Virus record (IMG/VR): IMGVR_UViG_3300030329_006583
Span: 62,001-126,000 of that record
Strand: one strand, 5' to 3'
DNA length: 64,000 nucleotides
Shown: positions 33,628 to 62,006 of the stretch, one piece after another
How positions within the stretch are numbered: position 1 is the first letter of the stretch
Layout of the letters: every line of letters begins with the position of its first letter
The notes under the pieces: generated by a model
Databases searched by the model: none
The model's input: the letters and a program-made list of their open reading frames with translations, nothing else
Told to the model about the DNA's origin: nothing
Made by a program: the position numbers and the translations under genes

Positions 33628-33633
33628 ATTTTT

Positions 33634-34890: not shown

Positions 34891-35015
34891 AGTGTTAAAT
34901 TAATCCACTAAGGTGTTTTGTAATTACTTGAACATAACACCTTTTAAAGTTAGTTTTCAATTGAAATATTATATTCTTATTCTAATATCGTAAATTCAAT
35001 CACGTGAACACTATG

Positions 35016-35873: not shown

Positions 35874-35879
35874 TTCTCC

Positions 35880-36707: not shown

Positions 36708-36736
36708 AAAGTTAATATAAAAACTTTTTCATTTTT

Positions 36737-37600: not shown

Positions 37601-37648
37601 TTAAAATCCCTTATTCAAATATATTAATATTTAAAATTCACATATTGA

Positions 37649-38233: not shown

Positions 38234-38237
38234 CTAC

Positions 38238-38744: not shown

Positions 38745-38745
38745 C

Positions 38746-39624: not shown

Positions 39625-39627
39625 TTC

Positions 39628-40566: not shown

Positions 40567-40577
40567 AAATTATTATA

Positions 40578-41243: not shown

Positions 41244-41247
41244 TATT

Positions 41248-42782: not shown

Positions 42783-42784
42783 TT

Positions 42785-45398: not shown

Positions 45399-46378
45399 TA
45401 TTTTTCCCCTTCTTTTGTTAACAAGCCCAAAGATATTAAATACTCCTCAAGCTCATCACTACCTATCACATCATCAGCACTAGTATAGCTAAAGGGTGGG
45501 CGGGTGGAATCTATTTCTTTATGAGAAGGATTAATTACATAATGTGTACCGGTATCACGCGTTCTTAATGATTCAGGTTCACAGATTAATGCTTCATGCA
45601 TTTTTTCACCAGGACGAATACCAATAGTTTTAACTTCTTTTCCTGATCTACGCCCAAATATTTTGGCTAAATCATAAATTCTCATGGCTTTTAGGCGAGG
45701 AATCCATATTTCTCCTGAGATTGCATTTTTAATAGCATGTAAAATAAGATCAACAGATTCATCCAAGGTCATAATAAATCTGGTCATATCTTTATGCGTT
45801 AAAGTAATTGATTCTGCATGAGAAGCTTGGTGATTAAACAAAGGAATAATGCTGCCTCGGGACGTCAAAACATTACCATACCTAACACAGATAAAACGTG
45901 GGTGGTTACCATAAAAAAACTCACGACTCACTGTCATTTTTTCCGAAACAGCTTTACACATACCATACGTATTTAATGGTTCACAAGCCTTATCAGTGCT
46001 AACCATAAGCACTGTATCAATTGCTAAATTTTTATAATTTTTTTCCACTGCCTTGACAATATTTTGAATTCCTGTGATATTTGTCAATATGCTTTCATTG
46101 GGTGTAAGCTCACATGTATCAACCTGTTTGAGAGCAGCTGCCATAATAATGATATCCGGATCTGTTTTAAGAATTACTTCTTCCACCCTATCATAATCCC
46201 TGATATCTCCAACATGAAACATTAAACCTGGTGGGTTGGAATATTCTGTTCTAATTTTCCAGTGTTTAGCTTCGTCACGAGAAAATATATGTAATGAATT
46301 ATTATCAACTAAGCGAGAAATCAAAGCCTTGCCTAGAGAACCAGAACCACCAAATATTAAACACTTTTTATCTTTCAT
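45398..46378 (-). CDS. UDP-N-acetylglucosamine 4,6-dehydratase (PseB/CapE/FnlA-like)
   Basis: GGSGSLG, SRDEAK, AAALKQV, STDKA, YGMCK, RYGNVLTSRGS, MTRF and GIRPGEKMHE. Confidence 0.93.
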   Translation of the reverse strand: MKDKKCLIFGGSGSLGKALISRLVDNNSLHIFSRDEAKHWKIRTEYSNPPGLMFHVGDIRDYDRVEEVILKTDPDIIIMAAALKQVDTCELTPNESILTNITGIQNIVKAVEKNYKNLAIDTVLMVSTDKACEPLNTYGMCKAVSEKMTVSREFFYGNHPRFICVRYGNVLTSRGSIIPLFNHQASHAESITLTHKDMTRFIMTLDESVDLILHAIKNAISGEIWIPRLKAMRIYDLAKIFGRRSGKEVKTIGIRPGEKMHEALICEPESLRTRDTGTHYVINPSHKEIDSTRPPFSYTSADDVIGSDELEEYLISLGLLTKEGEK

Positions 46379-46391
46379 TTCAATACCATCA

Positions 46392-47255
46392 TTATTTTAA
46401 TTTAGTTACCACAAATTCATTAGGCGGCACAATATTTAAGGAACCACGTGTGGGTAGATACCCAGCGTCACTTAATATTTGTTTTGTTTGATTACCAAAT
46501 AAAGAACCGCTTAACGTATCACCATCATTACCTAGACTCGTAAAAACACCACCATCAATACAACCACATAATTGATAATATTGATAAAATTTAGCCTGAA
46601 ATTGAAGCTCGGTAAAACTATCCAACATTGATAATTCATCAAAAACCAATTTCATAGTTTCCATTCTATTTAAACAACAAATTAAAGAAACAAAATTATT
46701 CAAATACACAAAGGGAATATCTGTTTTTTGAAAAAAAACTTTCTCTTTAGTAAAATAATTGGTTTGCCTTACCCATGCATGAGTCCTGGATTTTTCAGTA
46801 TGTATATCTTTATCGTATAAATGGCATTCCGACACGCTAAATTCTTGACACCTTACCGAACCAACTAAATCACATACATCTAAAAATTGTTCTGCATATG
46901 ATAGTTTTTCAATATCATAATAAACACAATCAGATTCAATGGGATAAATGTATTTGAATTTTTTTCCCATTATTTCTACATGATTATCAACTGCCCATTT
47001 AATAGCACTCCAATAACCTACATTAATATTAGATTTATAAACGTTTCTAAAATTATCTTTTAAAAATTTTAAAGTATTAGCGTAAGTAGAATCATTATCA
47101 AAAACAAGGATATTATCACGATAAACTTCTAGAAACTGGGTGTCTTGTAAACTCTTTACTGTTTTTTCCAAGCAAACGTGACGGGTTTCTTCCTTGCTAC
47201 ATGTTACCAAAACATATAACGTATCATGTGTTAATTTTTCTACATTCGTTTTCAT
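46392..47255 (-). CDS. Putative GT2-like glycosyltransferase
   Basis: VFDNDST, NVGYW and IESDC. Confidence 0.6.
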   Translation of the reverse strand: MKTNVEKLTHDTLYVLVTCSKEETRHVCLEKTVKSLQDTQFLEVYRDNILVFDNDSTYANTLKFLKDNFRNVYKSNINVGYWSAIKWAVDNHVEIMGKKFKYIYPIESDCVYYDIEKLSYAEQFLDVCDLVGSVRCQEFSVSECHLYDKDIHTEKSRTHAWVRQTNYFTKEKVFFQKTDIPFVYLNNFVSLICCLNRMETMKLVFDELSMLDSFTELQFQAKFYQYYQLCGCIDGGVFTSLGNDGDTLSGSLFGNQTKQILSDAGYLPTRGSLNIVPPNEFVVTKLK

Positions 47256-47260
47256 AAAAA

Positions 47261-48349
47261 TTAATGCATTTTCTTATATGTAGAAAGTGCAGATGCTATT
47301 ACCTGATCCATATCATAATATTTGTAACTTGCCAACCTTCCACCAAAAATAAAATTAGGGAAAGCTGCTTTTTCTTTATTATATTGATGATATCGCTCAT
47401 TGTTCACTTCGTCGTTCACCGGATAGTATGGAATTGAATTTTTGTTACACTTTACCGGGGTTTCGTATGTTACAACAGTTTTGGGTGAATTAGATTTCTC
47501 AAAATGTTTATGTTCAATAGTTCTTGTCCATGGCACCTCATCCCCTGTCCAATTAATCACCGGTGAACCTTGGTAGTTTTCTAAATCCATTACATTGTGT
47601 TGAAAATCTAAAGTACGATATTCTAATTCACCATGCTTGTAATCAAAAAATTCGTCTATTTTACCGGTATATACAACCTTATGGGCTTTCTTATTCCATT
47701 CATCCTTGTTTTCAAAATAATTCACGCCACACTTAACTTCCACCCCTTTTAACAATTCCTCGAATATCTTGGTATAACCACCAACCGGGATGCCACAGTA
47801 CTTATCATTAAAATAACTGTTGTCATACGTTAACCTAAATGGGAGACGTTTAATAATAAATGAAGGTAAATCTCGTGGTTCTCGCATCCACTGTTTTTTA
47901 GTATATCCGTAGATTAATTTTTCATATACATCGGTGCCCAATTGGGAAATTGCATATTCCTCAATATTTGTAGGGGATTCACAGTGAATTGAGGTTTCCT
48001 CTATTTTGTTTAATGCATCCTGAGGTGTGGTTGTGTTCCACAGTTGATGGAATGTCCACATATTAAAAGGGAGCGAATATAATTCACCTTTAAAATTGGC
48101 TACCGGGGAGTATGTAAATTGTTTAAATTCTGTAAACTTATTAACAAATTCCCATATTTTATCGCTATTTGTATGAAAAATATGAGGGCCATAATAATGT
48201 ACGTTAATCCCCTCCATGTTTTTAGTGTAACTATTTCCACCTATGTGTGTTCTCTTATCAATTACCAAACAGCTTTTTCCATCTTGTTTGGCTTGATAGG
48301 CAAAAACAGATCCAAAAAAACCGGCACCAACAATTAAATAATCATACAT
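47261..48349 (-). CDS. glf: UDP-galactopyranose mutase
   Basis: IVGAGFFG, HIGGN, HYYGPHIFHT, YTKKQW, PYYP and GRLASYKYYDMDQVI. Confidence 0.96.
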   Translation of the reverse strand: MYDYLIVGAGFFGSVFAYQAKQDGKSCLVIDKRTHIGGNSYTKNMEGINVHYYGPHIFHTNSDKIWEFVNKFTEFKQFTYSPVANFKGELYSLPFNMWTFHQLWNTTTPQDALNKIEETSIHCESPTNIEEYAISQLGTDVYEKLIYGYTKKQWMREPRDLPSFIIKRLPFRLTYDNSYFNDKYCGIPVGGYTKIFEELLKGVEVKCGVNYFENKDEWNKKAHKVVYTGKIDEFFDYKHGELEYRTLDFQHNVMDLENYQGSPVINWTGDEVPWTRTIEHKHFEKSNSPKTVVTYETPVKCNKNSIPYYPVNDEVNNERYHQYNKEKAAFPNFIFGGRLASYKYYDMDQVIASALSTYKKMH

Positions 48350-48352
48350 AAA

Positions 48353-49501
48353 TCACTTCAAATTCGTAATAAACGTTTCCCAATTTTTCCAATATTCCTC
48401 ATGATGAATACGTTGGGATATTTCATTCATTCCATTAACAAGATGGGAAACTAAATCTGGATTATTTTCAAGTTCATATAATGCTTGTGCCGCCTCCTTG
48501 GCATTTGTAACATGAATAGAATTCTTCCCATGAACCAAAAGACCGTTCGAATGGGTTGCATCAACGTAATCCTTCAATACCACAACCGGGGTGCATGCAA
48601 ATCTGGCATATGCCTCAACCCCACCGGCCCAATCATAACCCTTGAAATGCACAACTGCCTTAAGACCTTGAAATTTTTGAGCTGCCTGGCGTGGACTCAG
48701 GGTGGTGTAATTACCGGTGGGGCCCGATCCATCATATCTTATATCTGCCCCTTGCCTCCTAATATTTCCACCATAATTCACCGCTTGGATATTATGTGGT
48801 TTTAAATATTGGTTCATTTGATTAAACAAGGCAAATTCATTGGGATGACGCACATGAAAATTATGATTAAATGAGGCAAAACCTTTTCTATTTTCTGATG
48901 CAATAATTCCTCCCACACCTAAAATATCAAACTCTACTTGATTTCTATAAAAATTTATATTATTTCTATCGTTATACTCTTTATCATAATTGGCCGGTAA
49001 CATTCTGCATATATTATGGCAATCATTCGATCTTAAAGGACTAAAATGATCAAAGGTTGATGATACCCATTTTGCATTGGGAAATTTTTGTTTTGCAAAA
49101 TTTTTATATATGTCAAAAGAACCTATAACGTGATCGGTCGTGTGAAACAAATCAATTTTAATATCTTCTTTATCAAAATCAACCAAACTACATGTGATAT
49201 TTTCTTCAGTTAAAGGGGTTAATCTGTTTTGTTTCAATAAAAATTGATCTTCACCGTAAATCAATAAATCCTGATTTTGGGAATCAAATTTATAATATTC
49301 AAAATTTGTAATCCCGGGATTATGTGTCGATCTATGCAATAAAACTGGCCATAGAGGTGACATATCCCACGATAACCCACCGGTACCGGGGAATGGATAA
49401 AACACATTATGTCCTAAACGTGCATAATGATAAATCAATCCTGAAAGACCACCCCTGGAGCCGCGATCTAAAATACACACATTTAATTTATTCATTATCA
49501 A
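48353..49501 (-). CDS. Putative divergent GT-B glycosyltransferase
   Basis: C-terminal GT-B-like pattern (HFKGYDWAGGVEAYARFACTPVV...LVHGKNSI); island context. Confidence 0.45.
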   Translation of the reverse strand: MIMNKLNVCILDRGSRGGLSGLIYHYARLGHNVFYPFPGTGGLSWDMSPLWPVLLHRSTHNPGITNFEYYKFDSQNQDLLIYGEDQFLLKQNRLTPLTEENITCSLVDFDKEDIKIDLFHTTDHVIGSFDIYKNFAKQKFPNAKWVSSTFDHFSPLRSNDCHNICRMLPANYDKEYNDRNNINFYRNQVEFDILGVGGIIASENRKGFASFNHNFHVRHPNEFALFNQMNQYLKPHNIQAVNYGGNIRRQGADIRYDGSGPTGNYTTLSPRQAAQKFQGLKAVVHFKGYDWAGGVEAYARFACTPVVVLKDYVDATHSNGLLVHGKNSIHVTNAKEAAQALYELENNPDLVSHLVNGMNEISQRIHHEEYWKNWETFITNLK

Positions 49502-51140
49502 GAACCTTTTTTAATAGAATTTCATATTGTGGAAAATATAATGCATCAATATCAGTATTTAAAAAACAATTAATCGCATGTTGTGGTGTTTCACATATAG
49601 GTTCCCTATCATTAAAACTAGTGTTGAGTATAATAGGCACACCGGAATGTGTATGCCATTTTTTTAAAAACCCATAGTACCATGCATTGTCATTTTCCGT
49701 TACAGTTTGCAATCTAGCACTTCCATCAAAATGAACGACTGCTGGTACCTTATCCTTCATTTCATCTTTAAACATCAATACAAATTGCATGTACGCGCTT
49801 TCGATAGGATTTTTAAACCAATTTTGTGCCTCTTCATACAAGATTGACGGAGCAAAAGGTCGATACCATTGGCGATGTTTAACTTTCGCATTTACCCTAT
49901 CTTTCATTTCTTTTCGGCGAGGATCTGCTAAAATGCTTCTATTCCCTAATGCCCTACGACCTGATTCTGAACCTTCATTAAAAATTGAAACAATGCCTCC
50001 TGACTTTAAAAGGTTTATCACATCTTCATCATTTGATTTATTTATTTCAATATCTGTGGGTAAATTTTGTAATGCAGCATCTACATCCTCTTTTTTCCAC
50101 TCTTCACCAAGATAGGGTGAAAGATTATCATTCCATTGAACGCGCGGATTTCCTAAATGATGATGCCATACCCATTGTGCTGCACCTAATGACAAACCGC
50201 CATCGTACGGTACCGCTGGAATATAAACACCATCTATACGATCCGGAAACCAACTTTTTATTTTTCCAGCTATCACAGAGTTTAATGAAACACCGCCGGC
50301 CAAACATATGTTTTTGCAATGTGGCGACGCATTTAAGGCAAATTCAATAAATTCCTTCACCAATCTCTCTGTGGCGCTTTGTAAACCTGCCGCTAAATCA
50401 AATTTATCTTGTTCAGATCTATCGGCTATTTCAGACCATTTATTCAGATATGGGTGAACAGGATCCTTTCCTTTTACATACGCACCCTTAGGTTGATTTG
50501 GAGGTTTAAATCCCGCAGACAACACATCCGTTGTAAGCATTTTATAAAAATCATCATGATATTTTGTAGGATCACCAGGTGCTGCCATGGCCATCACAGA
50601 ACCCTCTTGTCCCCCTAGGGGCCACCCATTCTGTAATTTAAATATATAACGTGTTACCCGAGTCCAAACTCCGCCTATGTTAATTTGATGAGTTGGAAAT
50701 TTTCTAATACCGGTTAATTGTGTATCACTGCCATACCACAACGTTGTTGCTGTTTCACCACCATTATCATCTTCCACACCACCCCCATCCAAGGTTATAA
50801 CAATTGCATCATTAAATTTACTTGAATAAAATGCATGTGCTGCATGTGCTTGATGATGGGAAATAAAAAAGAACTTACCACCATTTTTTTCCGCCAATTC
50901 TTTTGCGGTATTAAAAGATACTTGATGTTGTGAAGTCTTTGAAGTTGGATAAACGGTGGCAAAATTAACTATATCTTCAATATCATCATCATTCAACCTA
51001 TCAAACATAAATTTAATAGAATCAGTTTGTGGAGATTTTTCACGATTGTATCTTTCATATTCTGCGTGAATGGTTGGTATACCATTCTCTAATATACAAA
51101 AAGAGCTATCGTGTCCTGACCATATTCCTGCTATTTTCAT
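49488..51140 (-). CDS. Carbamoyltransferase (NodU/CmcH/TobZ family)
   Basis: HDSS, ERYNREK, HHQAHA, DGGG, AGGVSLN, GRRALGNRSILADPR, VKHRQWYRPFAP, VHFDGSARLQTV and LNTSFN. Confidence 0.95.
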   Translation of the reverse strand: MKIAGIWSGHDSSFCILENGIPTIHAEYERYNREKSPQTDSIKFMFDRLNDDDIEDIVNFATVYPTSKTSQHQVSFNTAKELAEKNGGKFFFISHHQAHAAHAFYSSKFNDAIVITLDGGGVEDDNGGETATTLWYGSDTQLTGIRKFPTHQINIGGVWTRVTRYIFKLQNGWPLGGQEGSVMAMAAPGDPTKYHDDFYKMLTTDVLSAGFKPPNQPKGAYVKGKDPVHPYLNKWSEIADRSEQDKFDLAAGLQSATERLVKEFIEFALNASPHCKNICLAGGVSLNSVIAGKIKSWFPDRIDGVYIPAVPYDGGLSLGAAQWVWHHHLGNPRVQWNDNLSPYLGEEWKKEDVDAALQNLPTDIEINKSNDEDVINLLKSGGIVSIFNEGSESGRRALGNRSILADPRRKEMKDRVNAKVKHRQWYRPFAPSILYEEAQNWFKNPIESAYMQFVLMFKDEMKDKVPAVVHFDGSARLQTVTENDNAWYYGFLKKWHTHSGVPIILNTSFNDREPICETPQHAINCFLNTDIDALYFPQYEILLKKVLDNE

Positions 51141-51142
51141 TT

Positions 51143-52165
51143 TTATTCCTCCAACCAATCCTGTATGTGTTCAGGCTGTGTGTCCTCTATGTCACTAACA
51201 TCTGCAGCTGAATTATCAAAATAATGTGCAGGACCTTCACTTTTAATTAAATCCTTACTATATTTTACCTGATCTCCATCATGTGTTTTGGCATAATCCC
51301 AGCCCAATGGAAAACAAACATCAACAAAAGATAAAGGCGAAGCATCGTTTGCCTCATCAATTAAAAATGGGGCCGGATTGACTTCATAATACAAACCACC
51401 AGCCCCGTCACTGGGTGGTGTATAGTGACCCAACCTTTTATCGCCTCTCACAACTGCATGCATTCCTCGAGGATCATTCCAGATGGATGCAACAGATGGT
51501 ATATGTGGATGTAATGGGATTAATTTTTCTAATCCAATTGCCTCTTTGGCTTTTTTGTCCATATAATCCTCAGCGGAAGTAAATCCATCGTGTGTTAACT
51601 CCATCCCTGAATCTACAGGGTAATTGCCTATCTCTTTAAACAATTTCGGAGAATACAAACCTGTTGTATTTAAATGAACATTAATCCTTTTCCAATATTT
51701 CCTTTTAGTGAGTGGTGATTGCAATAACCTGGTATTTAAATCTATGTCATTTTTTACAGTAACCCTTCTCACTGCATGAATAGACATATGATATAATTCC
51801 AAATTATGAAAATCTTTCACGGTTTCTAGAAAAACAGTGGAATTAATGATTTGGGTATCATCCTGAAAAAAGCATAGTACATTACAATCTTCAGGAACGT
51901 GCTTTAATATTTCATTTTTTCCTTTCCATTCATCTTGGGCCGGATCCCTTTCTGTCCTTAATATCAATTTGTCGATTTCTGCATGATTTTCTAAAATATT
52001 TAAAAGATCTGGTTCTGTGGATCCATTATCCACATAAATTACATTAATATTAATGTCATTTGCAGGATTTTCTTTTACTGCCTTAATACTTTGCAAAAGG
52101 GCCAACGAATAATATTTTCTATTGCATCCCGTGATCCCAATTGTTAAATTAACGTTTTCACTCAT
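51143..52165 (-). CDS. GT2-family glycosyltransferase
   Basis: YVDNGSTE, FFQDD and SAED. Likely start MSENV at 52165. Confidence 0.75.
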   Translation of the reverse strand: MSENVNLTIGITGCNRKYYSLALLQSIKAVKENPANDININVIYVDNGSTEPDLLNILENHAEIDKLILRTERDPAQDEWKGKNEILKHVPEDCNVLCFFQDDTQIINSTVFLETVKDFHNLELYHMSIHAVRRVTVKNDIDLNTRLLQSPLTKRKYWKRINVHLNTTGLYSPKLFKEIGNYPVDSGMELTHDGFTSAEDYMDKKAKEAIGLEKLIPLHPHIPSVASIWNDPRGMHAVVRGDKRLGHYTPPSDGAGGLYYEVNPAPFLIDEANDASPLSFVDVCFPLGWDYAKTHDGDQVKYSKDLIKSEGPAHYFDNSAADVSDIEDTQPEHIQDWLEE

Positions 52166-52166
52166 T

Positions 52167-52538
52167 TTAATCACCCTTTAAAATACGATAACTGTCACTA
52201 TCGAAATGTTGTGTTGAAAATTCAAATAGCTCCGTATCTTCAAGTGCTATCATCCTATGTCTTAAACCCCGGTAGACATGAAAGTTATCTCCCGGGCCTA
52301 AAATCACTTCTGACGCTGAATCAATATCGTCTGAATCTGAATATATTACGCGTAACTTACCAGATTGAACATAGAAAACCTCGTCTTTTAATTTGTGATA
52401 ATGCCACGAACACATCTTACCTTTCACAAAATATAATAGTTTTCCGCAGTATTCTTCACAATTAACAATCCATTTTTCAAATCCCCATCCCTTGGGCACA
52501 AATTTGATAATATGATTGGTATTAATATCGTTCTTCAT
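52167..52538 (-). CDS. Cupin (sugar isomerase/epimerase-like)
   Basis: KGWGFE..SWHYH..KDEVFYV..G.RH cupin metal motif. Confidence 0.85.
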   Translation of the reverse strand: MKNDINTNHIIKFVPKGWGFEKWIVNCEEYCGKLLYFVKGKMCSWHYHKLKDEVFYVQSGKLRVIYSDSDDIDSASEVILGPGDNFHVYRGLRHRMIALEDTELFEFSTQHFDSDSYRILKGD

Positions 52539-53298
52539 ACTCTTTCCTACTCAATTGATAAGTACCAGATTTTGTAACACTTAGGGAGGCACATTTGTTT
52601 GCGCATTTAACAGAATCTATTAAATCACCAGTTTCCAACCATCTACACACCATAGTTGATAAAAAAACATCACCGGCGCCACATACATCATGTACATCAA
52701 CAGTGTCAGTTGAGTAAATTTTATCCCTATATAATGCGCCACGTGAACCTAAGGTAACAACCAAATCTGTGTCACCAGAGAGATTAATGCAATTATTAAA
52801 TTCTTTTTCATTTATTTTAACAATACAATTTTCAAAAATTGACATGTCATGTTTCTTGGTGTCAACAAATACCTGGGTATTATAGTGTGACACTATATAC
52901 CGAATTAATTCCTTGGTTATATAACCTTTGTCATAATCTGATATTACAATGGCATCATATGATTCATTGGGCAATGATGATGTCTGTAGTGGCACAATAT
53001 GCCCTTCTATGTCATGACGCATAATTTGATAATTTGTTTTTTTATCAATAAACCTAATTTTTTTAATCTGTTGTTTATCATTGCAAAGGTAATTTATTTC
53101 ACCTACCAGTATATTTTTAAAATTTTGATAAACATTTGCGGACATCCCGTGTTTATGTTCTTTGGTAATTTGAGTTAAAATAGGTACCGGTGCCTCAGGA
53201 CTCAACCTATTACATTCTCCATATACATATTCATCGATGCATGCATCACCGATCAACAATATTTTGTATTGTTTTTGTTGTTGAGTATCCTTTAACAT
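52522..53298 (-). CDS. PfkB-family kinase, HldE/RfaE domain I-like (heptose-7-phosphate kinase)
   Basis: IGDACIDEY..RLSPEAPVP, ISDYDKG and DVCGAGDVF. Confidence 0.9.
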   Translation of the reverse strand: MLKDTQQQKQYKILLIGDACIDEYVYGECNRLSPEAPVPILTQITKEHKHGMSANVYQNFKNILVGEINYLCNDKQQIKKIRFIDKKTNYQIMRHDIEGHIVPLQTSSLPNESYDAIVISDYDKGYITKELIRYIVSHYNTQVFVDTKKHDMSIFENCIVKINEKEFNNCINLSGDTDLVVTLGSRGALYRDKIYSTDTVDVHDVCGAGDVFLSTMVCRWLETGDLIDSVKCANKCASLSVTKSGTYQLSRKEYEERY

Positions 53299-53638
53299 AT
53301 TCAAAAATTTTTACCTCACATATATCATTACCAACTACATTTTCTACCTGATAATCTCCTCCCTTCACAATTATATCAGGTTTTATAGATTTGATTAAAA
53401 GATAGGGTGTCTCTTCTTCGAAGATTATTACTTCATCAACACATGATAATTCTAACAATAATGCCCTTCTGTCATCTTCACAATATACGGGTCTTTTATC
53501 ACCTTTTAATTTCTTAACACTAGAATCACTATTTAAACCAACGATTACCTTATCACCAATCTCCTTACAATATTTTAACAATTCGAGATGACCTCTATGA
53601 AACACATCAAAACAACCATTTGTGAAAATAACTTTCAT
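53246..53638 (-). CDS. Heptose-1-phosphate nucleotidyltransferase, HldE/RfaE domain II-like
   Basis: FTNGCFDVFHRGH, GLNSDSSVKKLKG..RP, KGGDY and GYSTT. Confidence 0.92.
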   Translation of the reverse strand: MKVIFTNGCFDVFHRGHLELLKYCKEIGDKVIVGLNSDSSVKKLKGDKRPVYCEDDRRALLLELSCVDEVIIFEEETPYLLIKSIKPDIIVKGGDYQVENVVGNDICEVKIFEYVKGYSTTKTIQNIVDR

Positions 53639-54459
53639 ATATTGCCTTTTATTGCTTCAACTATTTCATTTAAATCATGATATTGGGCATCATTATTACA
53701 TTGTTTACAGGCGATTTTTAATCCACATGGACCATGGGTAGATATTATTATGTTTTTATTTTGTGGATACTGTACCATCCTCTTATCTTGATAACCGGTA
53801 ATTATTACAACAGATTGTGTATTAAATGCTGTTGCACCATGAACCAGGCCACCTTCTGAAGATACAAATAATTTTGACTTGCCAATTATTCCACACGCAA
53901 TCCTAAAACTTTCTGTAAATGTAAGATCTACACAATTTTTTAGTTTTTTTGGACTGGTACCTACCTGTACAACTTGTATTTCCTTTGAAATTTCATCAAC
54001 TATATTTTGCCATTTTTCAAAAGGGTATTCCCTATTTGGCGTGTAATCATGATTAGAAAATGGTTCTATTGTCACAAAATCTTTTTCCAAGTTGGTGATT
54101 GCCGCTTGTACTAGTTTTTCTTCTGATTCATCTAAGAAAATATCACACTTAAGTTCTGGGTTTTCAATCCCATAAACTTCACAAACCTGTTGTATAATAT
54201 GCTTTTCAAATCTATGAAATGCCTTATTAGGTGTATCCTGTTTACAATAATTCGATGCAGGATTGTTTAATTGAAGTGGCACACAATTCTCATTTTGTGC
54301 ATTTTCAGGCTGCCAAATGTGAGGATTATTATAAAATATTACAGACTGCACCGGTTTGATGGTCTGACCATGTTGTTCAAATGGGAAAGATTTAAGCCCG
54401 GATCTTTTATATATTTCTCTTGCGGCAGCTGTCCACGTCAAGTATCCACCTAAACCCAT
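53635..54459 (-). CDS. GT9-like (ADP-heptose-type) glycosyltransferase
   Basis: GLGG N-terminus, REYPFEKWQ, VQVG, SKLFVSSEGGLVHGA and a C-terminal Cys cluster. Adjacent to the HldE-like genes. Confidence 0.75.
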   Translation of the reverse strand: MGLGGYLTWTAAAREIYKRSGLKSFPFEQHGQTIKPVQSVIFYNNPHIWQPENAQNENCVPLQLNNPASNYCKQDTPNKAFHRFEKHIIQQVCEVYGIENPELKCDIFLDESEEKLVQAAITNLEKDFVTIEPFSNHDYTPNREYPFEKWQNIVDEISKEIQVVQVGTSPKKLKNCVDLTFTESFRIACGIIGKSKLFVSSEGGLVHGATAFNTQSVVIITGYQDKRMVQYPQNKNIIISTHGPCGLKIACKQCNNDAQYHDLNEIVEAIKGNI

Positions 54460-55373
54460 TAATGTCCTCCCTCTAAAACCCTCATATACATCTGTGCCAC
54501 TTTCTTTATGTCCAGGTATGAATTATCAATTTCTAATTTTGGGAGCTCTAGGGAAGGTATTAGAATCTCGTAGGGATTATCATAATCAGTCAATTCGAAA
54601 TTATATAGGTTGTTTTCTTCTATGACTATCCCATTTTTTCTTACAATTTCCTTTGTTCCCCCAGAGCTAGAACAAATAACCGGGCAACCTTGAGAAAGGG
54701 ATTCTACCACAACATTTGGACAATGATCCAACCATGCCAAATGTATCATCCAATCCGCGGCTGAAAACATCTGCAAACATGCATCATGAGATATTGAACC
54801 GGTATAAAAAACATCATCATGATTGACCGGACAGTCCGGACTAGATCCCATCACCACCAAACAGGAGCTTGGGTATTTTTCTTTAAGCTTAAAAAATATT
54901 TCCATATTTTCTTTAAGTCTTTTTTGCCTATGCCAGTTTGCAGAACAAACAAACATATGTTTATATGCATTACGGATATTTAAAATCTCAGGTATATCAA
55001 CATTCACCCTTCTGAGTTCTATGCCGTTATGAATAACAACACCTCTTCTTTCCCCCCAATGGTGACATGTCATTTTTTTATCAAATTCAGACTGCCAAAT
55101 AACATAATCACAATTATCATATGCTAACTTTATTCCTTGGTTATGTGTTTTAAATTGGTCTGGTTTAAACCATATACCATCTAATCGCTGAACCTTCATG
55201 GCGTCCAATTTTAATGGTGTTGCCGGCTCAATAAAAATTAAAACAGAATCATAATCATGATTATAACCTACAATTTCATTTCCCATATTAACTAATTCAC
55301 CAGCCAATCTATGCGCAAAAGAATTAGGTCCACTAGTGGAGGAAAAATTGACATTTGAAAAATGAATCTTCAT
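54459..55373 (-). CDS. Glycosyltransferase, GT4-like
   Basis: SGPNSF, QRLDG, VIHNG and DHCPNVVVESLSQGCPVI. Confidence 0.88.
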   Translation of the reverse strand: MKIHFSNVNFSSTSGPNSFAHRLAGELVNMGNEIVGYNHDYDSVLIFIEPATPLKLDAMKVQRLDGIWFKPDQFKTHNQGIKLAYDNCDYVIWQSEFDKKMTCHHWGERRGVVIHNGIELRRVNVDIPEILNIRNAYKHMFVCSANWHRQKRLKENMEIFFKLKEKYPSSCLVVMGSSPDCPVNHDDVFYTGSISHDACLQMFSAADWMIHLAWLDHCPNVVVESLSQGCPVICSSSGGTKEIVRKNGIVIEENNLYNFELTDYDNPYEILIPSLELPKLEIDNSYLDIKKVAQMYMRVLEGGH

Positions 55374-55388
55374 ATATACATTTTAAAT

Positions 55389-56312
55389 TTAATTTTGATA
55401 AAGTTCATTTAGTGTAGAGAACAATTGTGTCATACATTCTTCCCAAGATATAGGAACATAAAGATTTTGAAAATGACTATCATTAAGAATTAATTCTTCA
55501 AGTTCAGTAAATCCACCAAAAACCTTACTTTGTTTTAAGCCAGCATCGGCAAATTCAATAGCACCACCGCCCTCTGCATGTACATATGTAGGCAATCCCA
55601 GCGCCAGAGATTCCAGGATATGATTAGGACCCGGATCAAATCTTGAACCACTAACATATATGTCATGCTTTAATAATTCGTGTGCCAATTCAATACCCGA
55701 TAATGGCGAAATACAATGAGTGTTTTTAAAAGAATTACGATGACGGCCCACATATGTAAATTCTATATCATCCCTTTTTCCCGCCAAATAATCTAAAAAA
55801 TCATATACATCAAATCCCTTGAGGATGTTATTAGACCAATGATGGGTCACTATTTTTAATTTATCAGAATTTGACTTTGTGTTTTTTCTTAGTTTCAAAT
55901 ATGCAGAATTCACACCATTATGCTGAACAGATGTGCTAGGGCATGCCCAGCCTTTTGCACCGAAATATTCCTCCATCCATTTTGAAACAAATATTGTGTG
56001 ATCGATCATTTGGCTACACTGAAGCAGCATTATATCCATATGCTCGGTGTTTTTTCTTGCATCACATTCATTAATTCTCTGAACTAACTTGCAATTTGGA
56101 TTGTGCAACTTATATTGGGAGGCGTCATTAATATTAAATCCCCCCGAATCGCTACGAGGATCCATAAGAAAAATAAGATCTATATTGGTATGTCCTAGGT
56201 TGGTGACAATCTCAATGGAATTAAGATTACAAAAATCAAAAAATCCCTTAACAAAATGATTACCTCCACCCCATGGGCCAGGACGAGGAGAACGATTGAT
56301 TGCAATTTTCAT
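55389..56312 (-). CDS. Glycosyltransferase, GT4-like
   Basis: PWGGGNHF, KGFD and SRFDPGPNHILESLALGLP. Confidence 0.85.
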   Translation of the reverse strand: MKIAINRSPRPGPWGGGNHFVKGFFDFCNLNSIEIVTNLGHTNIDLIFLMDPRSDSGGFNINDASQYKLHNPNCKLVQRINECDARKNTEHMDIMLLQCSQMIDHTIFVSKWMEEYFGAKGWACPSTSVQHNGVNSAYLKLRKNTKSNSDKLKIVTHHWSNNILKGFDVYDFLDYLAGKRDDIEFTYVGRHRNSFKNTHCISPLSGIELAHELLKHDIYVSGSRFDPGPNHILESLALGLPTYVHAEGGGAIEFADAGLKQSKVFGGFTELEELILNDSHFQNLYVPISWEECMTQLFSTLNELYQN

Positions 56313-57031
56313 GATATAAATCCCCGGCTTCTTAGATAATCACCTTCACTTTTCTGAAACTTTGCATCATCGGTTTGAAATGTTTCGGGTTTCATGTCAA
56401 TTGTGTAATGGTAGGTAACTATGGGTTCATAATGCCAATTTCCTGCTGCTTGATGTAACACTGGGAGATATATTGTTTGATCACCAATTCGTTTAAAATA
56501 CTCCCCATCTTCACCACGAAAATTTGCATCTTTTACGTTTTCAATAAGTGATTTTCGAAATGTTTTTAAATGTGATGATACCCATGGATGTTCATAAGGA
56601 TTGGCAGTTTTAGGTAGTGGTGCTGATATATTGTGATTAGAAAATGACCATCTATGTGCAGTCCATAATGCACCAACATTTAAGGTATTATAATGATGAT
56701 TAATAATAGTCAATGCATCACAATCACACAACCAATCATCGCCATCCAATCTGCAGATAATATCATTTGATTCTGTTTCCTTGAGTCCTTCAACAATATT
56801 TTTAATTTCCCAATGTTTTTCTGTGTTAACAGTTAAGCTTATTTTATCATCACCAAAACCAAATTGTCTTTTGAAATTATCTATTACTTCAGGGGTGCCA
56901 TCAGTTGACATGTCATCCCTAATTATGATTTTCCAATTATTATGTGTTTGAAAACCCACTGAAAAAAGGCTTCGGGTAATTGTTGATGCAGCATTGAACG
57001 CCGGCATAATAAAAACAAAACGATTATTCAC
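56309..57031 (-). CDS. GT2-family glycosyltransferase
   Basis: IMPAFNA, DDMSTDGT and LDGDDWL. Confidence 0.9.
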   Translation of the reverse strand: MNNRFVFIMPAFNAASTITRSLFSVGFQTHNNWKIIIRDDMSTDGTPEVIDNFKRQFGFGDDKISLTVNTEKHWEIKNIVEGLKETESNDIICRLDGDDWLCDCDALTIINHHYNTLNVGALWTAHRWSFSNHNISAPLPKTANPYEHPWVSSHLKTFRKSLIENVKDANFRGEDGEYFKRIGDQTIYLPVLHQAAGNWHYEPIVTYHYTIDMKPETFQTDDAKFQKSEGDYLRSRGFIS

Positions 57032-58961
57032 CTAAATATTCCTTAATACATGTTGGATGTGATATATCAAGTTCCAGGTGTTGTGTTGGTTTAGAGAAAT
57101 CTACTCTTTCATGAAAAACCCATCCCCCCATCTTTTCTTTTAATTCTTGGGCCAGGTTATCAATTTCTTCTTCAGTAACATCTTTCCACGCTTTATCAAA
57201 AAACATGTTATTTTCAGGAATGTCTTCTTGTGTAATGTTATAAAGGCTAAGCCAGTGTTTTGACCAATAGTTTTTATACGTTCTTATTTTTCTTCCCAAA
57301 TCAAACCAAGAATAATGATGAACAGAGGGTAATAATTCTATGTTTCTACCAAACCATTCCTGATATTTTTCAAATGCTTCCTTATTTCCTGCCATGGCGT
57401 GAATCCTTAGGTTATGTGCATCTGTATGATAAAAAGATGCATGTGCTATTACTTCACCGGTATCATTATCAATATAATCACAACCATCTGTACCCATTGC
57501 TGCGTACAAATTATTGTCTTCATCATATTTTCTAAAATTAGCAGGAATTCCATGAGTAATGTGATTTTTATTTCTAGAAATTCTCCACTTCCATGGAGTT
57601 ACATCCATTCTCACCTTTTCTTCAGAACCCCAATATTCCACAACTGGAAGACACACTAAATCTACTTGTGTAGGAAATGATTTAATCAAATTAAATATTT
57701 TTTCATAATCATTTTCATGCACTACTTCATCGGAATCCTGTTGCCAACAAAAATCTCCGTTGCACAAAGATCTCGCGTGTGCCTTCTGTGTACCATCAAA
57801 AACTGCATGTCTGGGGTGATTCCAATCTTTTTCATTTTTGAATACTTTCAATCTCTCTTCTGTTTTTGACCATTCCTCTAGTTTTTCCCAGGTGCCATCA
57901 GTTGAACCACCGTCAACCACTATCACTTCATCACAAAAACCCAACATCGATGTAATAGAGGCTTCATAAGGATATTTTTGAGAAATACAATCTTTCGTTG
58001 TAGTATAACCAGAAAGGCTAGGTCTCCAATCCATTGAGTGTTTAATTCCTTTCCAAAACGTTTCTCGAGCGGCATACAAATAAGCCTCGGTATCGAATGC
58101 ATCATCTGTATTAAACCATATTTCATCCTTATGCTGAACATTATCATTTAAGTGAAGTTTGCAACCTAACATTTTCGCTTCTATCACCATTCTTGGGCAT
58201 GTATCACCCCCAGCTGGCAAATAAACAAAGCCTTCGGCTTGTGCCAATCTCTCTAGTACTTCTTCATAAGGTAAATTCCATACTACTTCATAATCTTTAT
58301 TGTTTTCCTTGCACCATTGTTCTGCAGATTCTGCACCTTTAACCCAGCTCGTAGAACCCAATACAATCCAACCCTTTCTTTCATGGGATGAATATTTTTC
58401 ATTTAATAATTTAACAGTAAGAAAAAAATTATGATCAAAAACAGAACTTAATACTGTATTATTTTTTTCCTCAAGAAATGGAAATACTTTAAAATATATT
58501 TCTTGCTGTTTTTCTGACATCCACCAAAGAGATTGTGCCCCATAATAAAATGCAGATATCATTTTTCCATGCATTTCATTGTGACAGTTACACATATGTG
58601 ACTCGGCGGCATAATGCTTGTCTGGTGAACGGTACTTACAATACTTGTAATCATATTCTAAAATAGAATAATTTAAATTTCCAACAATGCTGGGAATTAA
58701 ATTCATATCCATATTGGAAAAGTTACCAAATACCCAATATTTTTCATATCCGGATTCTAGAATTTCCAACGTTAAATCTTTACTTTTTAGTTTAAAAATA
58801 TCAAAAGGACATGAGGTTATTAATGCATCAGATGTAAGTTCAGCACCCCCACAATATTCTTCAGCAAACATGTCTGAAACAAAGATTATTTCTGTGTTTT
58901 CCGGAATTTCAATAGCAGTTGAATTCGATGATGTGTTAAATGGACTACTAGAACCAAACAT
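57024..58961 (-). CDS. Bifunctional glycosyltransferase: N-terminal GT-B fused to C-terminal GT2
   Basis: GGAEL..KG..DTCPRMVIEAKMLGC (GT-B), then VVDGGSTDGT..QDSDE (GT-A). GGAGG precedes the ATG at 58961. Confidence 0.85.
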   Translation of the reverse strand: MFGSSSPFNTSSNSTAIEIPENTEIIFVSDMFAEEYCGGAELTSDALITSCPFDIFKLKSKDLTLEILESGYEKYWVFGNFSNMDMNLIPSIVGNLNYSILEYDYKYCKYRSPDKHYAAESHMCNCHNEMHGKMISAFYYGAQSLWWMSEKQQEIYFKVFPFLEEKNNTVLSSVFDHNFFLTVKLLNEKYSSHERKGWIVLGSTSWVKGAESAEQWCKENNKDYEVVWNLPYEEVLERLAQAEGFVYLPAGGDTCPRMVIEAKMLGCKLHLNDNVQHKDEIWFNTDDAFDTEAYLYAARETFWKGIKHSMDWRPSLSGYTTTKDCISQKYPYEASITSMLGFCDEVIVVDGGSTDGTWEKLEEWSKTEERLKVFKNEKDWNHPRHAVFDGTQKAHARSLCNGDFCWQQDSDEVVHENDYEKIFNLIKSFPTQVDLVCLPVVEYWGSEEKVRMDVTPWKWRISRNKNHITHGIPANFRKYDEDNNLYAAMGTDGCDYIDNDTGEVIAHASFYHTDAHNLRIHAMAGNKEAFEKYQEWFGRNIELLPSVHHYSWFDLGRKIRTYKNYWSKHWLSLYNITQEDIPENNMFFDKAWKDVTEEEIDNLAQELKEKMGGWVFHERVDFSKPTQHLELDISHPTCIKEYLGE

Positions 58962-59050
58962 ATACCCATACCTCCAGAGCTTAAGCAAATTTATTTCAAA
59001 TTATTCTGAATGTATATTATACAAAACTAATTACTGTAGTATTTTATTTT

Positions 59051-60441: not shown

Positions 60442-60496
60442 GCAATTTCCTTTCGTGTACATTTAACGTATACACAATATTGTTCTTAATATAAAT

Positions 60497-61884: not shown

Positions 61885-62006
61885 GATACGCTCCTTCTTA
61901 TTTTTGAGTGGAAGATTATAATTAGTCATAGATTTTACTACTGTTGACGGCATATGTCCCTTATTCCACCTTCATATATATACGGTAATTCCTTAAATTA
62001 ATTAAG

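What the first reader, a model, noticed from the sequence alone, without database searches (positions are those of the whole stretch)
52167..54459. Heptose mini-operon (GT9, nucleotidyltransferase, kinase, cupin) lacking GmhA and GmhB
Seen: the HldE functions are split into two genes with the nucleotidyltransferase first. They are coupled to a GT9-like enzyme ending in a Cys cluster (HGPCGLKIACKQC) and to a cupin. No SIS-domain GmhA or HAD-family GmhB is in the window. Established: ADP-heptose is the donor for LPS-core GT9 enzymes and for Cys/iron-finger protein O-heptosyltransferases (Aah/TibC). Inference: this is phage-directed protein heptosylation. Alternatively it is a variant pathway in which the cupin replaces the isomerase or a different sugar is activated.
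Basis: partly seen in the sequence, partly recalled or inferred. Interest (0 to 1): 0.65.

Follow-up and report, generated by a model that had tools for sequence, protein, structure and literature searches.

The report
Marine phage heptose-activation gene cassette
A large marine phage carries a sugar-activating gene set for the seven-carbon sugar heptose, common in ocean cyanophages, in which a small metal-binding cupin protein probably replaces the usual first enzyme of the pathway; what the heptose is finally attached to is still unknown.

Summary
The four genes are real and sit where stated, all on the minus strand: a GT9-like transferase, an HldE-domain-II nucleotidyltransferase, an HldE-domain-I kinase and a cupin. 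They are not a private mini-operon. They lie inside a roughly 27 kb array of soluble sugar enzymes next to giant structural genes, in a 267 kb Tara Oceans viral contig.

The core order NT-kinase-(small HAD)-cupin is a widespread marine-virus cassette:
- 71 of 80 kinase-anchored viral loci carry the cupin.
- None of the 80 carries an SIS-type GmhA.
- The cassette has been annotated in cultured cyanophages since P-SSM2.

Most relatives have a 105-120 aa HAD phosphatase between kinase and cupin. Databases misname it "phosphoheptose isomerase". This phage encodes that HAD about 70 kb away, so "no GmhB" holds for the window but not for the genome.

The cupin travels with both HldE-type and HddA/HddC-type heptose kinases. 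Among specific sugar-enzyme families it matches only aldose-ketose isomerases.

The TibC-like protein-heptosylation reading is not supported. There is no beta-barrel, the Cys spacing differs, and glycine occupies the catalytic Asp position. Similar Cys clusters also come and go across this GT9-like family. The acceptor remains open.

The parts
53635..54459 (-). GT9-like glycosyltransferase, 274 aa. It has a reduced N-lobe with no beta-1 strand and starts MGLGG. It carries an H242/C245/C251/C254(/H261) metal knuckle. Donor-site motifs YTPNR and SEGGLVH are conserved.
   Evidence: PF01075 at cut-off. AF2 pLDDT 93.5. Foldseek and VIA top hits are all GT9. Invariant residues from A1. C-lobe alignment to WaaC/WaaF by hhalign.
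53246..53638 (-). HldE-domain-II-type sugar-1-phosphate nucleotidyltransferase (HldC-like), 130 aa, with an intact HRGH motif.
   Evidence: TIGR02199 E 7e-48, 162 bits against cut-off 181.5. PF01467. phrog_7878.
52522..53304 (-). HldE-domain-I-type PfkB kinase (HldA-like), 258-260 aa, with a DVCGAGD motif. Its start overlaps the end of the NT gene.
   Evidence: TIGR02198 E 3.7e-38, 131 bits against cut-off 345. PF00294. phrog_8133 E 1e-79. Invariant residues from A3.
52167..52538 (-). 123 aa single-domain metal cupin, equal to cyanophage T4-GC307 and phrog_7851 'cysteine dioxygenase'. It is the candidate sedoheptulose-7-P isomerase. Motif H46-x-H48-x2-K51-x-E53 plus H94.
   Evidence: Cupin_2. 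phrog_7851 E 6e-60. AF2 pLDDT 92.9. PDB sequence hits to L-ribose isomerase share HxHxxKxE. Lyx_isomer in 11 of 25 and MannoseP_isomer in 3 of 25 family members. Synteny.
54459..59000 (-). Upstream co-directional transferases that travel with the cassette: GT4 (54459-55373), a 307 aa GT-like protein (55389-56312), GT2 (56309-57031) and a 654 aa GT2-containing protein (57024-58988).
   Evidence: Pfam. phrog_2170 weak match. The same GT2-GT4-GT9 order in related viral loci.
49488..52174 (-). Downstream neighbours that travel with the cassette: a 343 aa GT2-like protein (51143-52174) and a NodU/CmcH-type carbamoyltransferase (49488-51158).
   Evidence: Pfam. Carbamoyltransferase follows the cupin in many related loci.
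32464..49501 (-). Rest of the soluble glycan island: UDP-galactopyranose mutase, PseB/FnlA-like dehydratase, DegT aminotransferase, two formyltransferases, SDRs, acetyl- and methyltransferases, an NDP-sugar dehydrogenase and two GT4s. No polytopic membrane protein.
   Evidence: NCBIfam. Precomputed Pfam. Hydropathy scan.

Best explanation
The four genes are the local copy of a widespread marine-virus cassette that makes a nucleotide-activated heptose without GmhA. [quoted passage not shown]

Proposed steps:
1. The cupin isomerises sedoheptulose-7-P to D-glycero-D-manno-heptose-7-P. This is phosphomannose-isomerase-type chemistry on a metal centre.
2. The PfkB kinase phosphorylates O1.
3. A small HAD-IIIA phosphatase removes the 7-phosphate. 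In this phage it is encoded about 70 kb away; in most relatives it lies between kinase and cupin.
4. The HldC-like enzyme adds the nucleotide.
5. The GT9-like enzyme encoded directly upstream uses the product as donor. It works with the neighbouring soluble GT2 and GT4 enzymes and the carbamoyltransferase of a 27 kb glycan island beside the giant structural genes.

What is shown: gene identities, intact catalytic motifs, conserved synteny, and absence of SIS GmhA. What is inferred: the cupin's reaction, the nucleotide, and the donor-acceptor pairing. The acceptor is not determined. It could be a host envelope glycan, a virion protein or DNA.
For: Heptose identity:
- The best NCBIfam hits for the NT and the kinase are the HldE domain models.
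- In relatives the cassette also carries an HldD-like SDR (TIGR02197, 207 bits).
- In one locus a true GmhB (NF006506, E 6e-40) sits in place of the small HAD.

Cassette conservation:
- GT9-anchored loci: 28 of 32 have NT and kinase, 25 have the cupin, 19 have the HAD.
- Kinase-anchored loci: 71 of 80 have the cupin, 49 the small HAD, and 0 an E. coli-GmhA-like gene.

Absence of SIS GmhA:
- No SIS_2 in this 267 kb record, in S-SM2, in Bellamy, or in a 100%-complete 190 kb relative.
- Among 50,697 phage records, all 31 cyanophage or marine records with the kinase also have the cupin, and none has a GmhA-like gene.

Link between cupin and the early heptose steps:
- The cupin-only phages Bellamy and SynMITS9220M01 place it between HddA-like (E 7e-83) and HddC-like genes, with the small HAD nearby. 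The cupin therefore accompanies two non-homologous heptose kinases, whose pathways share only the isomerase and phosphatase steps.
- Cellular genomes repeat the link: an HldE-like kinase directly upstream of the cupin (L105), and HAD-kinase-cupin in an archaeal MAG (L094).

Cupin chemistry:
- Metal ligands are conserved: H46 (Glu in two divergent members), H48, E53 and H94; K51 is invariant.
- The HxHxxKxE motif is shared with L-ribose isomerase.
- The only specific sugar families hit are Lyx_isomer and MannoseP_isomer.
- Fold hits include D-lyxose isomerases and the 110 aa T. kodakarensis phosphomannose isomerase.

The small HAD has a DxDxT motif and matches HAD-IIIA and TIGR01689 capsule phosphatase.
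Against: - There is no biochemical evidence for any step.
- The kinase scores far below the HldE equivalog cut-off (131 against 345 bits), so its substrate could differ.
- The top Foldseek hit of the cupin is the CapF cupin domain, a nucleotide-4-keto-sugar epimerase. E-values across cupin classes are nearly tied.
- In Binatia genomes the closest cellular cupins sit beside a true GDP-mannose 4,6-dehydratase and an SDR, not beside heptose genes. In Bellamy a Gmd-like and an RmlD-like gene are adjacent. Both contexts also fit an epimerase role.
- One cupin-bearing cellular genome does have an SIS_2 protein elsewhere.
- Host GmhA cannot be excluded, because the host is unknown.
- The record is about 78% complete, so a GmhA could lie in the missing part.
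- The GT9-like protein has Gly where GT9 enzymes have their catalytic Asp, so its activity is itself uncertain.
Confidence: 0.5

Rival explanations
1. The GT9-like enzyme is a TibC/Aah-type protein O-heptosyltransferase whose Cys cluster is an iron finger. It heptosylates phage (virion) or host proteins.
For: - The GT9 fold matches include TibC (Z 17.5).
- The metal knuckle lies between the last C-lobe strand and the C-terminal helices. By the range offsets of the VIA alignment this is roughly the region where the TibC iron finger is inserted.
- The N-lobe is reduced, as in TibC.
- All island enzymes are soluble and the island abuts giant structural genes, so cytoplasmic glycosylation of virion proteins is physically possible.
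Against: - There is no N-terminal beta-barrel; the alignment starts at TibC residue 106.
- The motif is H-x2-C-x5-C-x2-C, not C-x2-C-x15-C-x11-C.
- Gly occupies the position of catalytic Asp110.
- Similarity to the Veillonella GT9 and to WaaF is higher than to TibC.
- Cys clusters are gained and lost across the wider family: 70 of 150 have some form and 80 have none.
- No autotransporter-like beta-helix substrate was identified.
- Soluble GTs also act on lipid-linked acceptors; WaaC and WaaF are examples.
Confidence: 0.12
2. The cupin is not the isomerase. It modifies a nucleotide sugar (for example C3/C5 epimerisation of a 4-keto intermediate, like the CapF cupin domain or the Campylobacter heptose epimerases) or has another role. 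The phage relies on host GmhA for heptose-7-P.
For: - CapF is the top Foldseek hit.
- The Binatia cupins lie next to Gmd and an SDR.
- Bellamy has Gmd-like and RmlD-like genes beside the cupin.
- SDRs are often adjacent in cassette loci.
- One cupin-bearing cellular genome has an SIS_2 protein.
Against: - The conserved core NT-kinase-HAD-cupin contains no dehydratase.
- The adjacent SDR is HldD-like, and HldD needs no partner.
- Sequence-level hits are to aldose-ketose isomerases, not to RmlC, FdtA or CapF.
- The cupin follows two different kinase/NT types whose downstream chemistry differs.
- No GmhA-like gene occurs in any of the cyanophage records.
Confidence: 0.2
3. The cassette serves DNA hypermodification. 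Activated heptose is transferred to hydroxymethylated bases of the phage genome, as shown for a phage cluster that has a HAD/kinase, a cytidylyltransferase and a GT-B enzyme.
For: - A published phage gene cluster with a HAD/kinase, a cytidylyltransferase-type NT and a GT-B enzyme makes mono- and di-heptosyl-5hmC in E. coli (bioRxiv 10.1101/2023.12.21.572611).
- This genome has a thymidylate-synthase-family gene at G000:252647-253345 whose best phage hits include 'deoxyuridylate hydroxymethyltransferase'.
Against: - The GT here is GT9-like, not T4 beta-GT-like.
- No Tet/JBP gene was found, although that control search rang nowhere.
- The cassette sits in a polysaccharide-type island with Glf, a carbamoyltransferase and many GTs, about 137 kb from the TS-like gene.
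- The same cassette occurs in cyanomyoviruses, which are not known to carry hmC (own knowledge, not tested here).
Confidence: 0.06
4. A different sugar is activated. The divergent PfkB kinase and the NT act on another ketose- or aldose-phosphate made by the cupin, for example a hexose or octose analogue. The GT9-like enzyme transfers that sugar.
For: - The kinase is far below the HldE equivalog cut-off.
- The NT is slightly below its cut-off.
- The GT9-like enzyme is very divergent, at the Pfam cut-off and lacking the catalytic Asp.
Against: - The best hits of both enzymes are the heptose models, by wide margins over ribokinase and glycerol-3-P cytidylyltransferase.
- HldD-like, GmhB, HddA and HddC genes occur as interchangeable partners in relatives.
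Confidence: 0.1

Closest known systems
Bacterial ADP-L-glycero-beta-D-manno-heptose pathway (GmhA, HldE or HldA+HldC, GmhB, HldD)
   Same: Kinase and nucleotidyltransferase are homologous to the two HldE domains. The phosphatase is of HAD subfamily IIIA, like GmhB. Relatives carry an HldD-like SDR. The logic of kinase, then phosphatase, then NT is the same.
   Different: - There is no SIS-fold GmhA; a 123 aa metal cupin occupies that slot.
- The phosphatase is a minimal 105-120 aa HAD, about 60% the size of GmhB, and here it is unlinked.
- HldE is split, with the NT gene first.
- There is no clear HldD in this window.
Cyanophage 'LPS gene' clusters T4-GC 304-308 (P-SSM2, S-SM2, S-CAM1/3, S-SSM7, S-T4, P-TIM68)
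   Same: The same kinase, NT, cupin and small HAD families at 37-68% identity, in the same neighbourhood of glycosyltransferases and carbamoyltransferase. They are interpreted in the literature as host-surface modification genes (PMC1079782, PMC7029224).
   Different: - This contig is larger (267 kb or more), and no cultured phage record in the collection carries a recognised family for the GT9-like gene (no PHROG match).
- The HAD has been moved out of the cassette.
- Published annotations call the HAD 'phosphoheptose isomerase' and the cupin 'nucleotidyltransferase' or 'cysteine dioxygenase'. The sequence evidence here contradicts both names.
GT9 LPS heptosyltransferases WaaC/WaaF and Veillonella GT9 (PDB 3tov)
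   Same: GT-B fold with Z 16-21. Conserved donor-site motifs (T-x-x-R/K ... W/Y-P, and [DE]-x-G-L-x-H).
   Different: - 274 aa against about 320-350 aa.
- The first beta strand is missing.
- Gly sits at the catalytic Asp13 position.
- There is an extra H/C metal knuckle, plus conserved C72/H82/H87/C105 in the N-lobe.
- A lipid A-Kdo acceptor is unlikely for this N-lobe.
Autotransporter heptosyltransferases TibC/Aah (BAHT family)
   Same: GT9-related catalytic domain with a reduced N-lobe. A Cys-based metal site before the C-terminal helices; by alignment offsets this is about where TibC has its iron finger.
   Different: No beta-barrel domain. Different ligand set and spacing. No catalytic Asp. 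No evidence of a dodecamer. No closer in structure than the LPS enzymes.
Cupin aldose-ketose isomerases (D-lyxose/mannose isomerase, L-ribose isomerase, small archaeal phosphomannose isomerase, type II PMI cupin domain)
   Same: Single cupin barrel. Metal site of His, His, Glu and His. HxHxxKxE motif. Weak but recurrent profile matches. The proposed reaction is the C7 homologue of the PMI reaction.
   Different: Matches are below or at family cut-offs. The enzyme is smaller than D-lyxose isomerases. The substrate would be a heptulose phosphate. A distinct, highly conserved C-terminal E-F-S-T...D-x-D-S motif is present.

Membership tests
HldE domain II / HldC heptose-1-P adenylyltransferase | Match to TIGR02199 above its trusted cut-off, and the (H/T)xGH nucleotidyltransferase motif | tested here: inconclusive
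   162.1 bits against cut-off 181.5, E 7e-48, full-length match. The HRGH motif is present. Nucleotide and sugar specificity were not tested.
HldE domain I / HldA heptose-7-P kinase | Match to TIGR02198 above its cut-off, and the PfkB DxxGAGD catalytic motif | tested here: inconclusive
   131 bits against cut-off 345. This is still the best family by about 87 bits over ribokinase. DVCGAGD is invariant.
GmhA (SIS-fold sedoheptulose-7-P isomerase) | SIS domain (PF13580 / TIGR00441) | tested here: not met
   No match in the window or the 267 kb record. None in S-SM2, Bellamy or two related viral genomes. None in the 80 cassette loci.
GmhB (HAD-IIIA heptose-1,7-bisphosphate phosphatase) | HAD-IIIA fold with DxDxT, and a match to TIGR00213 or NF006506 | tested here: not met
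   Nothing in the window. The distal 117 aa HAD has DIDET but matches only PF25109 weakly (E 4.7e-4) and phrog_1238. A relative's small HAD matches TIGR01689 and HAD-IIIA. It is a functional analogue at best, not a GmhB family member.
GT9 (Pfam PF01075, WaaC/WaaF type) | GT-B fold closest to GT9 structures, and the donor-binding C-lobe motifs | tested here: met
   Z 16-21 to all GT9 structures, with the next fold class at 11.8. PF01075 at 22.0 bits, equal to the cut-off; most homologues carry it. YTPNR and SEGGLVH align to the WaaC/WaaF donor motifs.
GT9 (Pfam PF01075, WaaC/WaaF type) | Catalytic Asp in the N-terminal G-D loop (WaaC/WaaF D13) | tested here: not met
   Invariant G5 lies at that position by the offsets of three structural alignments (model 1 to WaaC 9, WaaF 9, TibC 106). 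Distant relatives keep G-D. This was inferred from range offsets, not from a residue-level superposition.
BAHT (TibC/Aah) protein heptosyltransferases | N-terminal beta-barrel domain (TibC residues 1-97) | tested here: not met
   The protein starts at the equivalent of TibC residue 106.
BAHT (TibC/Aah) protein heptosyltransferases | Four-Cys iron finger (C339, C342, C358, C370) | tested here: not met
   Here the motif is H242-x2-C245-x5-C251-x2-C254(-x6-H261). The identity of the metal was not testable.
BAHT (TibC/Aah) protein heptosyltransferases | Dodecameric ring and beta-hairpin thumb | not tested
   No oligomer prediction was run.
Cupin aldose-ketose isomerases (PF07385 Lyx_isomer / PF01050 MannoseP_isomer) | Profile match above cut-off, and a His/His/Glu/His metal site with the HxHxxKxE motif | tested here: inconclusive
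   The window protein itself has no match at E<=0.01. 11 of 25 family members match Lyx_isomer (best 3.4e-4) and 3 of 25 match MannoseP_isomer (best 6e-6). One cellular homologue reaches the Lyx_isomer cut-off. The metal-ligand positions and Lys are conserved.
Phage DNA-heptosylating clusters (5hmC hypermodification) | A GT-B of T4 beta-GT type next to a 5hmC-making enzyme (C5-MT + 5mYOX, or dCMP hydroxymethylase) | tested here: not met
   The GT is GT9-like. No Tet_JBP was found, although that search had no positive control. The TS-family gene lies about 137 kb away.

The most novel reading that the evidence does not exclude
The 123 aa cupin (phrog_7851, annotated 'cysteine dioxygenase') would be a previously unrecognised, GmhA-unrelated class of sedoheptulose-7-phosphate isomerase.

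Consequences if true:
- The cupin occurs in more than 5,000 90%-identity clusters. The kinase motif that anchors the cassette gave at least 598 pattern matches in IMG/VR. These widespread marine viruses would then carry a fully autonomous heptose pathway.
- The gene widely counted as the viral 'gmhA' AMG would actually be the pathway's phosphatase.

A further, less likely layer is that the Asp-less, metal-knuckle GT9-like enzyme puts the heptose on virion fibre proteins.
Probability: 0.45. Interest if true: 0.65.

Novelty: new variant of a known kind. Interest (0 to 1): 0.5.

Why it matters
Heptose nucleotides are building blocks of bacterial envelopes. The genes discussed here are among the commonest "auxiliary" genes of ocean viruses.

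- If the cupin is the isomerase, this would be a case of non-orthologous displacement in a textbook pathway.
- It would correct two entrenched misannotations. "Phosphoheptose isomerase" would be a HAD phosphatase. "Cysteine dioxygenase" or "nucleotidyltransferase" would be the isomerase.
- It would show that these phages can make activated heptose from a pentose-phosphate-pathway intermediate without host help.
- This fits their known rewiring of that pathway (own knowledge, not tested here).
- It would also change how viral "gmhA" counts in metagenomes should be read.
- The acceptor of the sugar (host surface, virion or DNA) is a separate open question with ecological weight, touching superinfection exclusion, grazing and host range.

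Tried and rejected
- PDB sequence searches with the GT9-like protein, alone or as a profile, gave only a marginal WaaF hit. The fold search was needed.
- hhalign of the family against E. coli WaaC/WaaF aligned the C-lobe but was unreliable for the N-lobe. The Gly-for-Asp statement therefore rests on structural range offsets.
- The promoter and terminator scan found no more sites than shuffled sequence (84 against 82.9; 10 against 9.0). It gives no operon boundaries.
- A GmhA-anchored search of viral contigs returned only host gmhA genes at the borders of predicted prophages. It could not test complementary distribution.
- The 'mannose-6-phosphate isomerase' reported in cyanophage S-SCSM1 (PMC9602691) is a different family. 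The cupin's tblastn at E<=1e-3 returned only 35 phage records, and none was S-SCSM1.
- Full-text paper searches for a cupin-type sedoheptulose isomerase in phages found nothing relevant.
- The idea that the Cys cluster marks a protein-heptosyltransferase was rejected after looking at 150 family representatives.
- The reads tools, the complex prediction and the atlas searches were not used, because none would decide the open points.


Full report
**Observation**

The window is bases 62001-126000 of a 267 kb linear viral record from a Tara Oceans metagenome. CheckV estimates it about 78% complete. Nearly all long ORFs are on the minus strand. At 52167-54459 there are four tightly packed or overlapping ORFs:
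- a 274 aa GT9-like protein (PF01075 at exactly its 22-bit cut-off);
- a 130 aa nucleotidyltransferase (TIGR02199 rfaE_dom_II, 162 bits, cut-off 181.5);
- a 258-260 aa PfkB kinase (TIGR02198 rfaE_dom_I, 131 bits, cut-off 345);
- a 123 aa cupin (Cupin_2, E 2.8e-10).

No SIS or GmhB-class HAD is found in the window or anywhere in the 267 kb.

**Context**

The four genes are not a free-standing operon. They lie in an unbroken co-directional array from about 32 to 59 kb. The array includes:
- GT2, GT4 and GT-like proteins;
- a NodU-type carbamoyltransferase;
- UDP-galactopyranose mutase;
- a PseB/FnlA-like dehydratase and a DegT aminotransferase;
- two formyltransferases and several SDRs;
- acetyl- and methyltransferases and an NDP-sugar dehydrogenase.

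None of these proteins has more than one hydrophobic segment. There is thus no flippase, polymerase or polytopic initiating transferase. Downstream (1-28 kb) are giant ORFs of 500-2250 aa. The layout matches the 'host recognition cluster' with glycosyltransferases and rfaE described for marine T4-like phages (PMC7029224).

**The cassette is common and already annotated**

GT9-anchored viral loci:
- 28 of 32 show GT9-NT-kinase.
- 25 also have the cupin.
- 19 have a 105-120 aa ORF between kinase and cupin.

Kinase-anchored loci (taken from at least 598 pattern matches):
- 71 of 80 have the cupin within 7 kb, usually adjacent.
- 49 have the small ORF.
- One has a true GmhB in its place (NF006506, E 6e-40).
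- None has a gene resembling E. coli GmhA.
- Only 4 have the GT9-like gene, so the transferase is an accessory of one sub-lineage.

In cultured phages the kinase and the cupin are each found in 35 records, essentially all cyanomyoviruses. These include P-SSM2, P-SSM5, S-CAM1, S-CAM3, S-SSM7, S-SM2, S-T4 and P-TIM68. All 31 cyanophage or marine-virus records that have the kinase also have the cupin. These are the T4-GC 304-308 'LPS genes' known since P-SSM2 (PMC1079782).

**The small ORF is a HAD phosphatase, and this phage has one**

The S-SM2 genes annotated 'phosphoheptose isomerase' (GC306) match only HAD_PNKP weakly. They carry DxDxT, T, K and DD motifs. A relative matches TIGR01689 capsule phosphatase and HAD-IIIA. 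The present genome encodes a 117 aa member at G000:C1:185301-185663. It has a DIDET motif, matches phrog_1238 at E 2e-22, and is 51% identical to SSM2_207. It lies about 70 kb from the cassette, near an endolysin and a second cytidylyltransferase-like gene.

So "no GmhB" is true of the window but not of the genome. The literature's viral 'gmhA' AMG of this type (for example PMC9238414) is by sequence the pathway's phosphatase.

**What the cupin most likely does**

Three lines of evidence point to the isomerase step.

1. *Pathway bookkeeping.* The conserved core has four genes for a four-step pathway. Kinase, phosphatase and NT are accounted for, and SIS GmhA is absent. It is missing from this record, from S-SM2, from Bellamy and from a 100%-complete 190 kb relative. 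It is also missing from all the cyanophage records.

2. *The cupin follows the early steps, not the late ones.*
   - In Bellamy and SynMITS9220M01 it sits between HddA-like (E 7e-83) and HddC-like genes, with the small HAD nearby. That is the GDP-alpha-heptose route. This route shares only the isomerase and phosphatase steps with the ADP-beta route.
   - In an uncultured bacterial genome an HldE-like kinase (306 bits) lies directly upstream of a 52%-identical cupin.
   - In an archaeal MAG the order is HAD-kinase-cupin.

3. *Chemistry.*
   - The metal ligands H46 (Glu in two divergent members), H48, E53 and H94 are conserved, and K51 is invariant.
   - The HxHxxKxE motif is shared with L-ribose isomerase.
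   - The only specific sugar-enzyme families hit by family members are D-lyxose isomerase (11 of 25) and PMI type II (3 of 25).
   - The fold search returns D-lyxose isomerases and the 110 aa T. kodakarensis phosphomannose isomerase among near-tied hits.
   - S7P to manno-heptose-7-P is the C7 homologue of the PMI reaction. That last point is established chemistry and my inference, not a result here.

**Evidence against the isomerase reading**

- The best Foldseek hit is the CapF cupin domain, a 4-keto-sugar epimerase.
- The closest cellular homologues, in Binatia, sit by a true Gmd and an SDR.
- Bellamy has Gmd-like and RmlD-like neighbours.
- One cupin-bearing genome has an SIS protein elsewhere.
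- The host's GmhA status is unknown.

I put the isomerase reading at about 0.5 and the epimerase-or-other reading at about 0.2.

**The GT9-like protein**

The AF2 model is confident, with pLDDT 93.5. VIA Z scores separate GT9 structures from everything else: 3tov 20.9, WaaF 18.4, TibC 17.5, WaaC 16.2, and the next fold at 11.8. Donor-site motifs align to WaaC and WaaF.

It is atypical in four ways:
- It is 274 aa and starts directly at the loop that follows beta-1 in other GT9 enzymes.
- By the offsets of three independent structural alignments, the invariant G5 falls on the catalytic Asp (WaaC/WaaF D13, TibC D110). More distant relatives keep G-D.
- H242, C245, C251 and C254 are invariant, and H261 is nearly so.
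- C72, H82, H87 and C105 are also invariant.

Against the TibC reading:
- There is no beta-barrel.
- The ligand spacing differs from C339, C342, C358 and C370.
- It is no closer structurally to TibC than to LPS enzymes.
- In 150 representatives of the 5,546-member wider family, the H-x2-C-x5-C-x2-C motif occurs in 40, other Cys patterns in 30, and none in 80.

The cluster therefore looks like a variable structural metal knuckle rather than a marker of protein substrates. The enzyme's acceptor, and given the missing Asp even its mechanism, remain open.

**Acceptor hypotheses**

- *Host-surface remodelling.* This is the standard reading in the literature (PMC1079782, PMC7029224, PMC9602691).
- *Virion-protein glycosylation.* It is physically possible, because all the enzymes are soluble and the island abuts structural genes. 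There is no positive evidence.
- *DNA hypermodification.* This is a real rival. A phage cluster with a HAD/kinase, a cytidylyltransferase and a GT-B enzyme was shown to make heptosyl-5hmC (bioRxiv 10.1101/2023.12.21.572611). This genome also has a thymidylate-synthase-family gene whose best phage matches include a 'deoxyuridylate hydroxymethyltransferase'. However, the GT here is not beta-GT-like, and the TS-like gene is about 137 kb away.

**Verdict**

- The gene set is a known cyanophage module.
- The new elements are three: the functional reassignment of cupin and HAD, the relocation of the HAD in this phage, and the unusual GT9-like subfamily.
- Everything mechanistic is inference from sequence, fold and synteny, and it is directly testable with ordinary enzymology and complementation.

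Noticed in passing
G000:C1:185301-185663 (outside the window; L007:1420-1773, minus strand): A 117 aa HAD phosphatase (DIDET motif, phrog_1238 'phosphoheptose isomerase') lies between an endolysin (PG-binding plus GH25-like) and an FKBP-type isomerase. A second cytidylyltransferase-like gene is two genes away. The database name 'phosphoheptose isomerase' for this family appears to be a misannotation.
   Followed up: yes
window 60805-61953 (-): A 382 aa tubulin/FtsZ-family protein (PF00091; TIGR00065, E 2.5e-11) lies just upstream of the glycan island. Such PhuZ/TubZ-like proteins are typical of jumbo phages.
   Followed up: no
window 59143-60462 (-) and 60497-60808 (+): A PhoH-family ATPase is fused to a PIN_4 domain. 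A small plus-strand ORF with a Sigma70_r4 match is one of very few plus-strand genes in the window.
   Followed up: no
G000:C1:252647-253345 (outside the window; L202): A thymidylate-synthase-family gene (PF00303, 124.6 bits). Its best matches in phage records include a 'deoxyuridylate hydroxymethyltransferase' and Bacillus phage G gp319. It may hint at base hypermodification.
   Followed up: partly
G000:C1 115249-115656, 149743-150204, 168697-169107, 183923-184402: The genome holds four paralogous cytidylyltransferase-like nucleotidyltransferases but only one kinase, one cupin and one small HAD.
   Followed up: partly
window 35880-36707 (-): A PD-(D/E)XK nuclease family protein (PF12705) is embedded in the middle of the sugar-enzyme array.
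   Followed up: no
window 53635-54459 (-), residues 72-105: Besides the C-terminal knuckle, C72, H82, H87 and C105 are invariant in 32 family members, and C93 is nearly so. This may be a second metal site in the reduced N-lobe. Geometry was not checked.
   Followed up: no
window 53246-53304: The NT and kinase ORFs overlap by about 50 nt. A comparable overlap recurs in most related loci, which suggests translational coupling of the split HldE functions.
   Followed up: partly
L023, L025, L044 (related viral or MAG loci): A variant cassette has a roughly 300 aa NT, a distant (25% identical) kinase and a 136-139 aa cupin with E-x-H in place of H-x-H. L044 carries both this cupin type and the canonical one.
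   Followed up: partly
L054 (Prochlorococcus sp. AG-409-P03 single-cell genome, 130 kb contig): A 65%-identical cupin lies next to a DegT aminotransferase, a radical-SAM/SPASM protein and a dCMP deaminase, with no heptose genes within 8 kb. This may be a genomic island or co-sorted phage DNA.
   Followed up: partly
window 945-28053 (-): A run of very large ORFs (2250, 934, 533, 924, 550, 901, 384, 1280, 528 and 616 aa), presumably fibre or baseplate-type structural proteins. They were not analysed.
   Followed up: no
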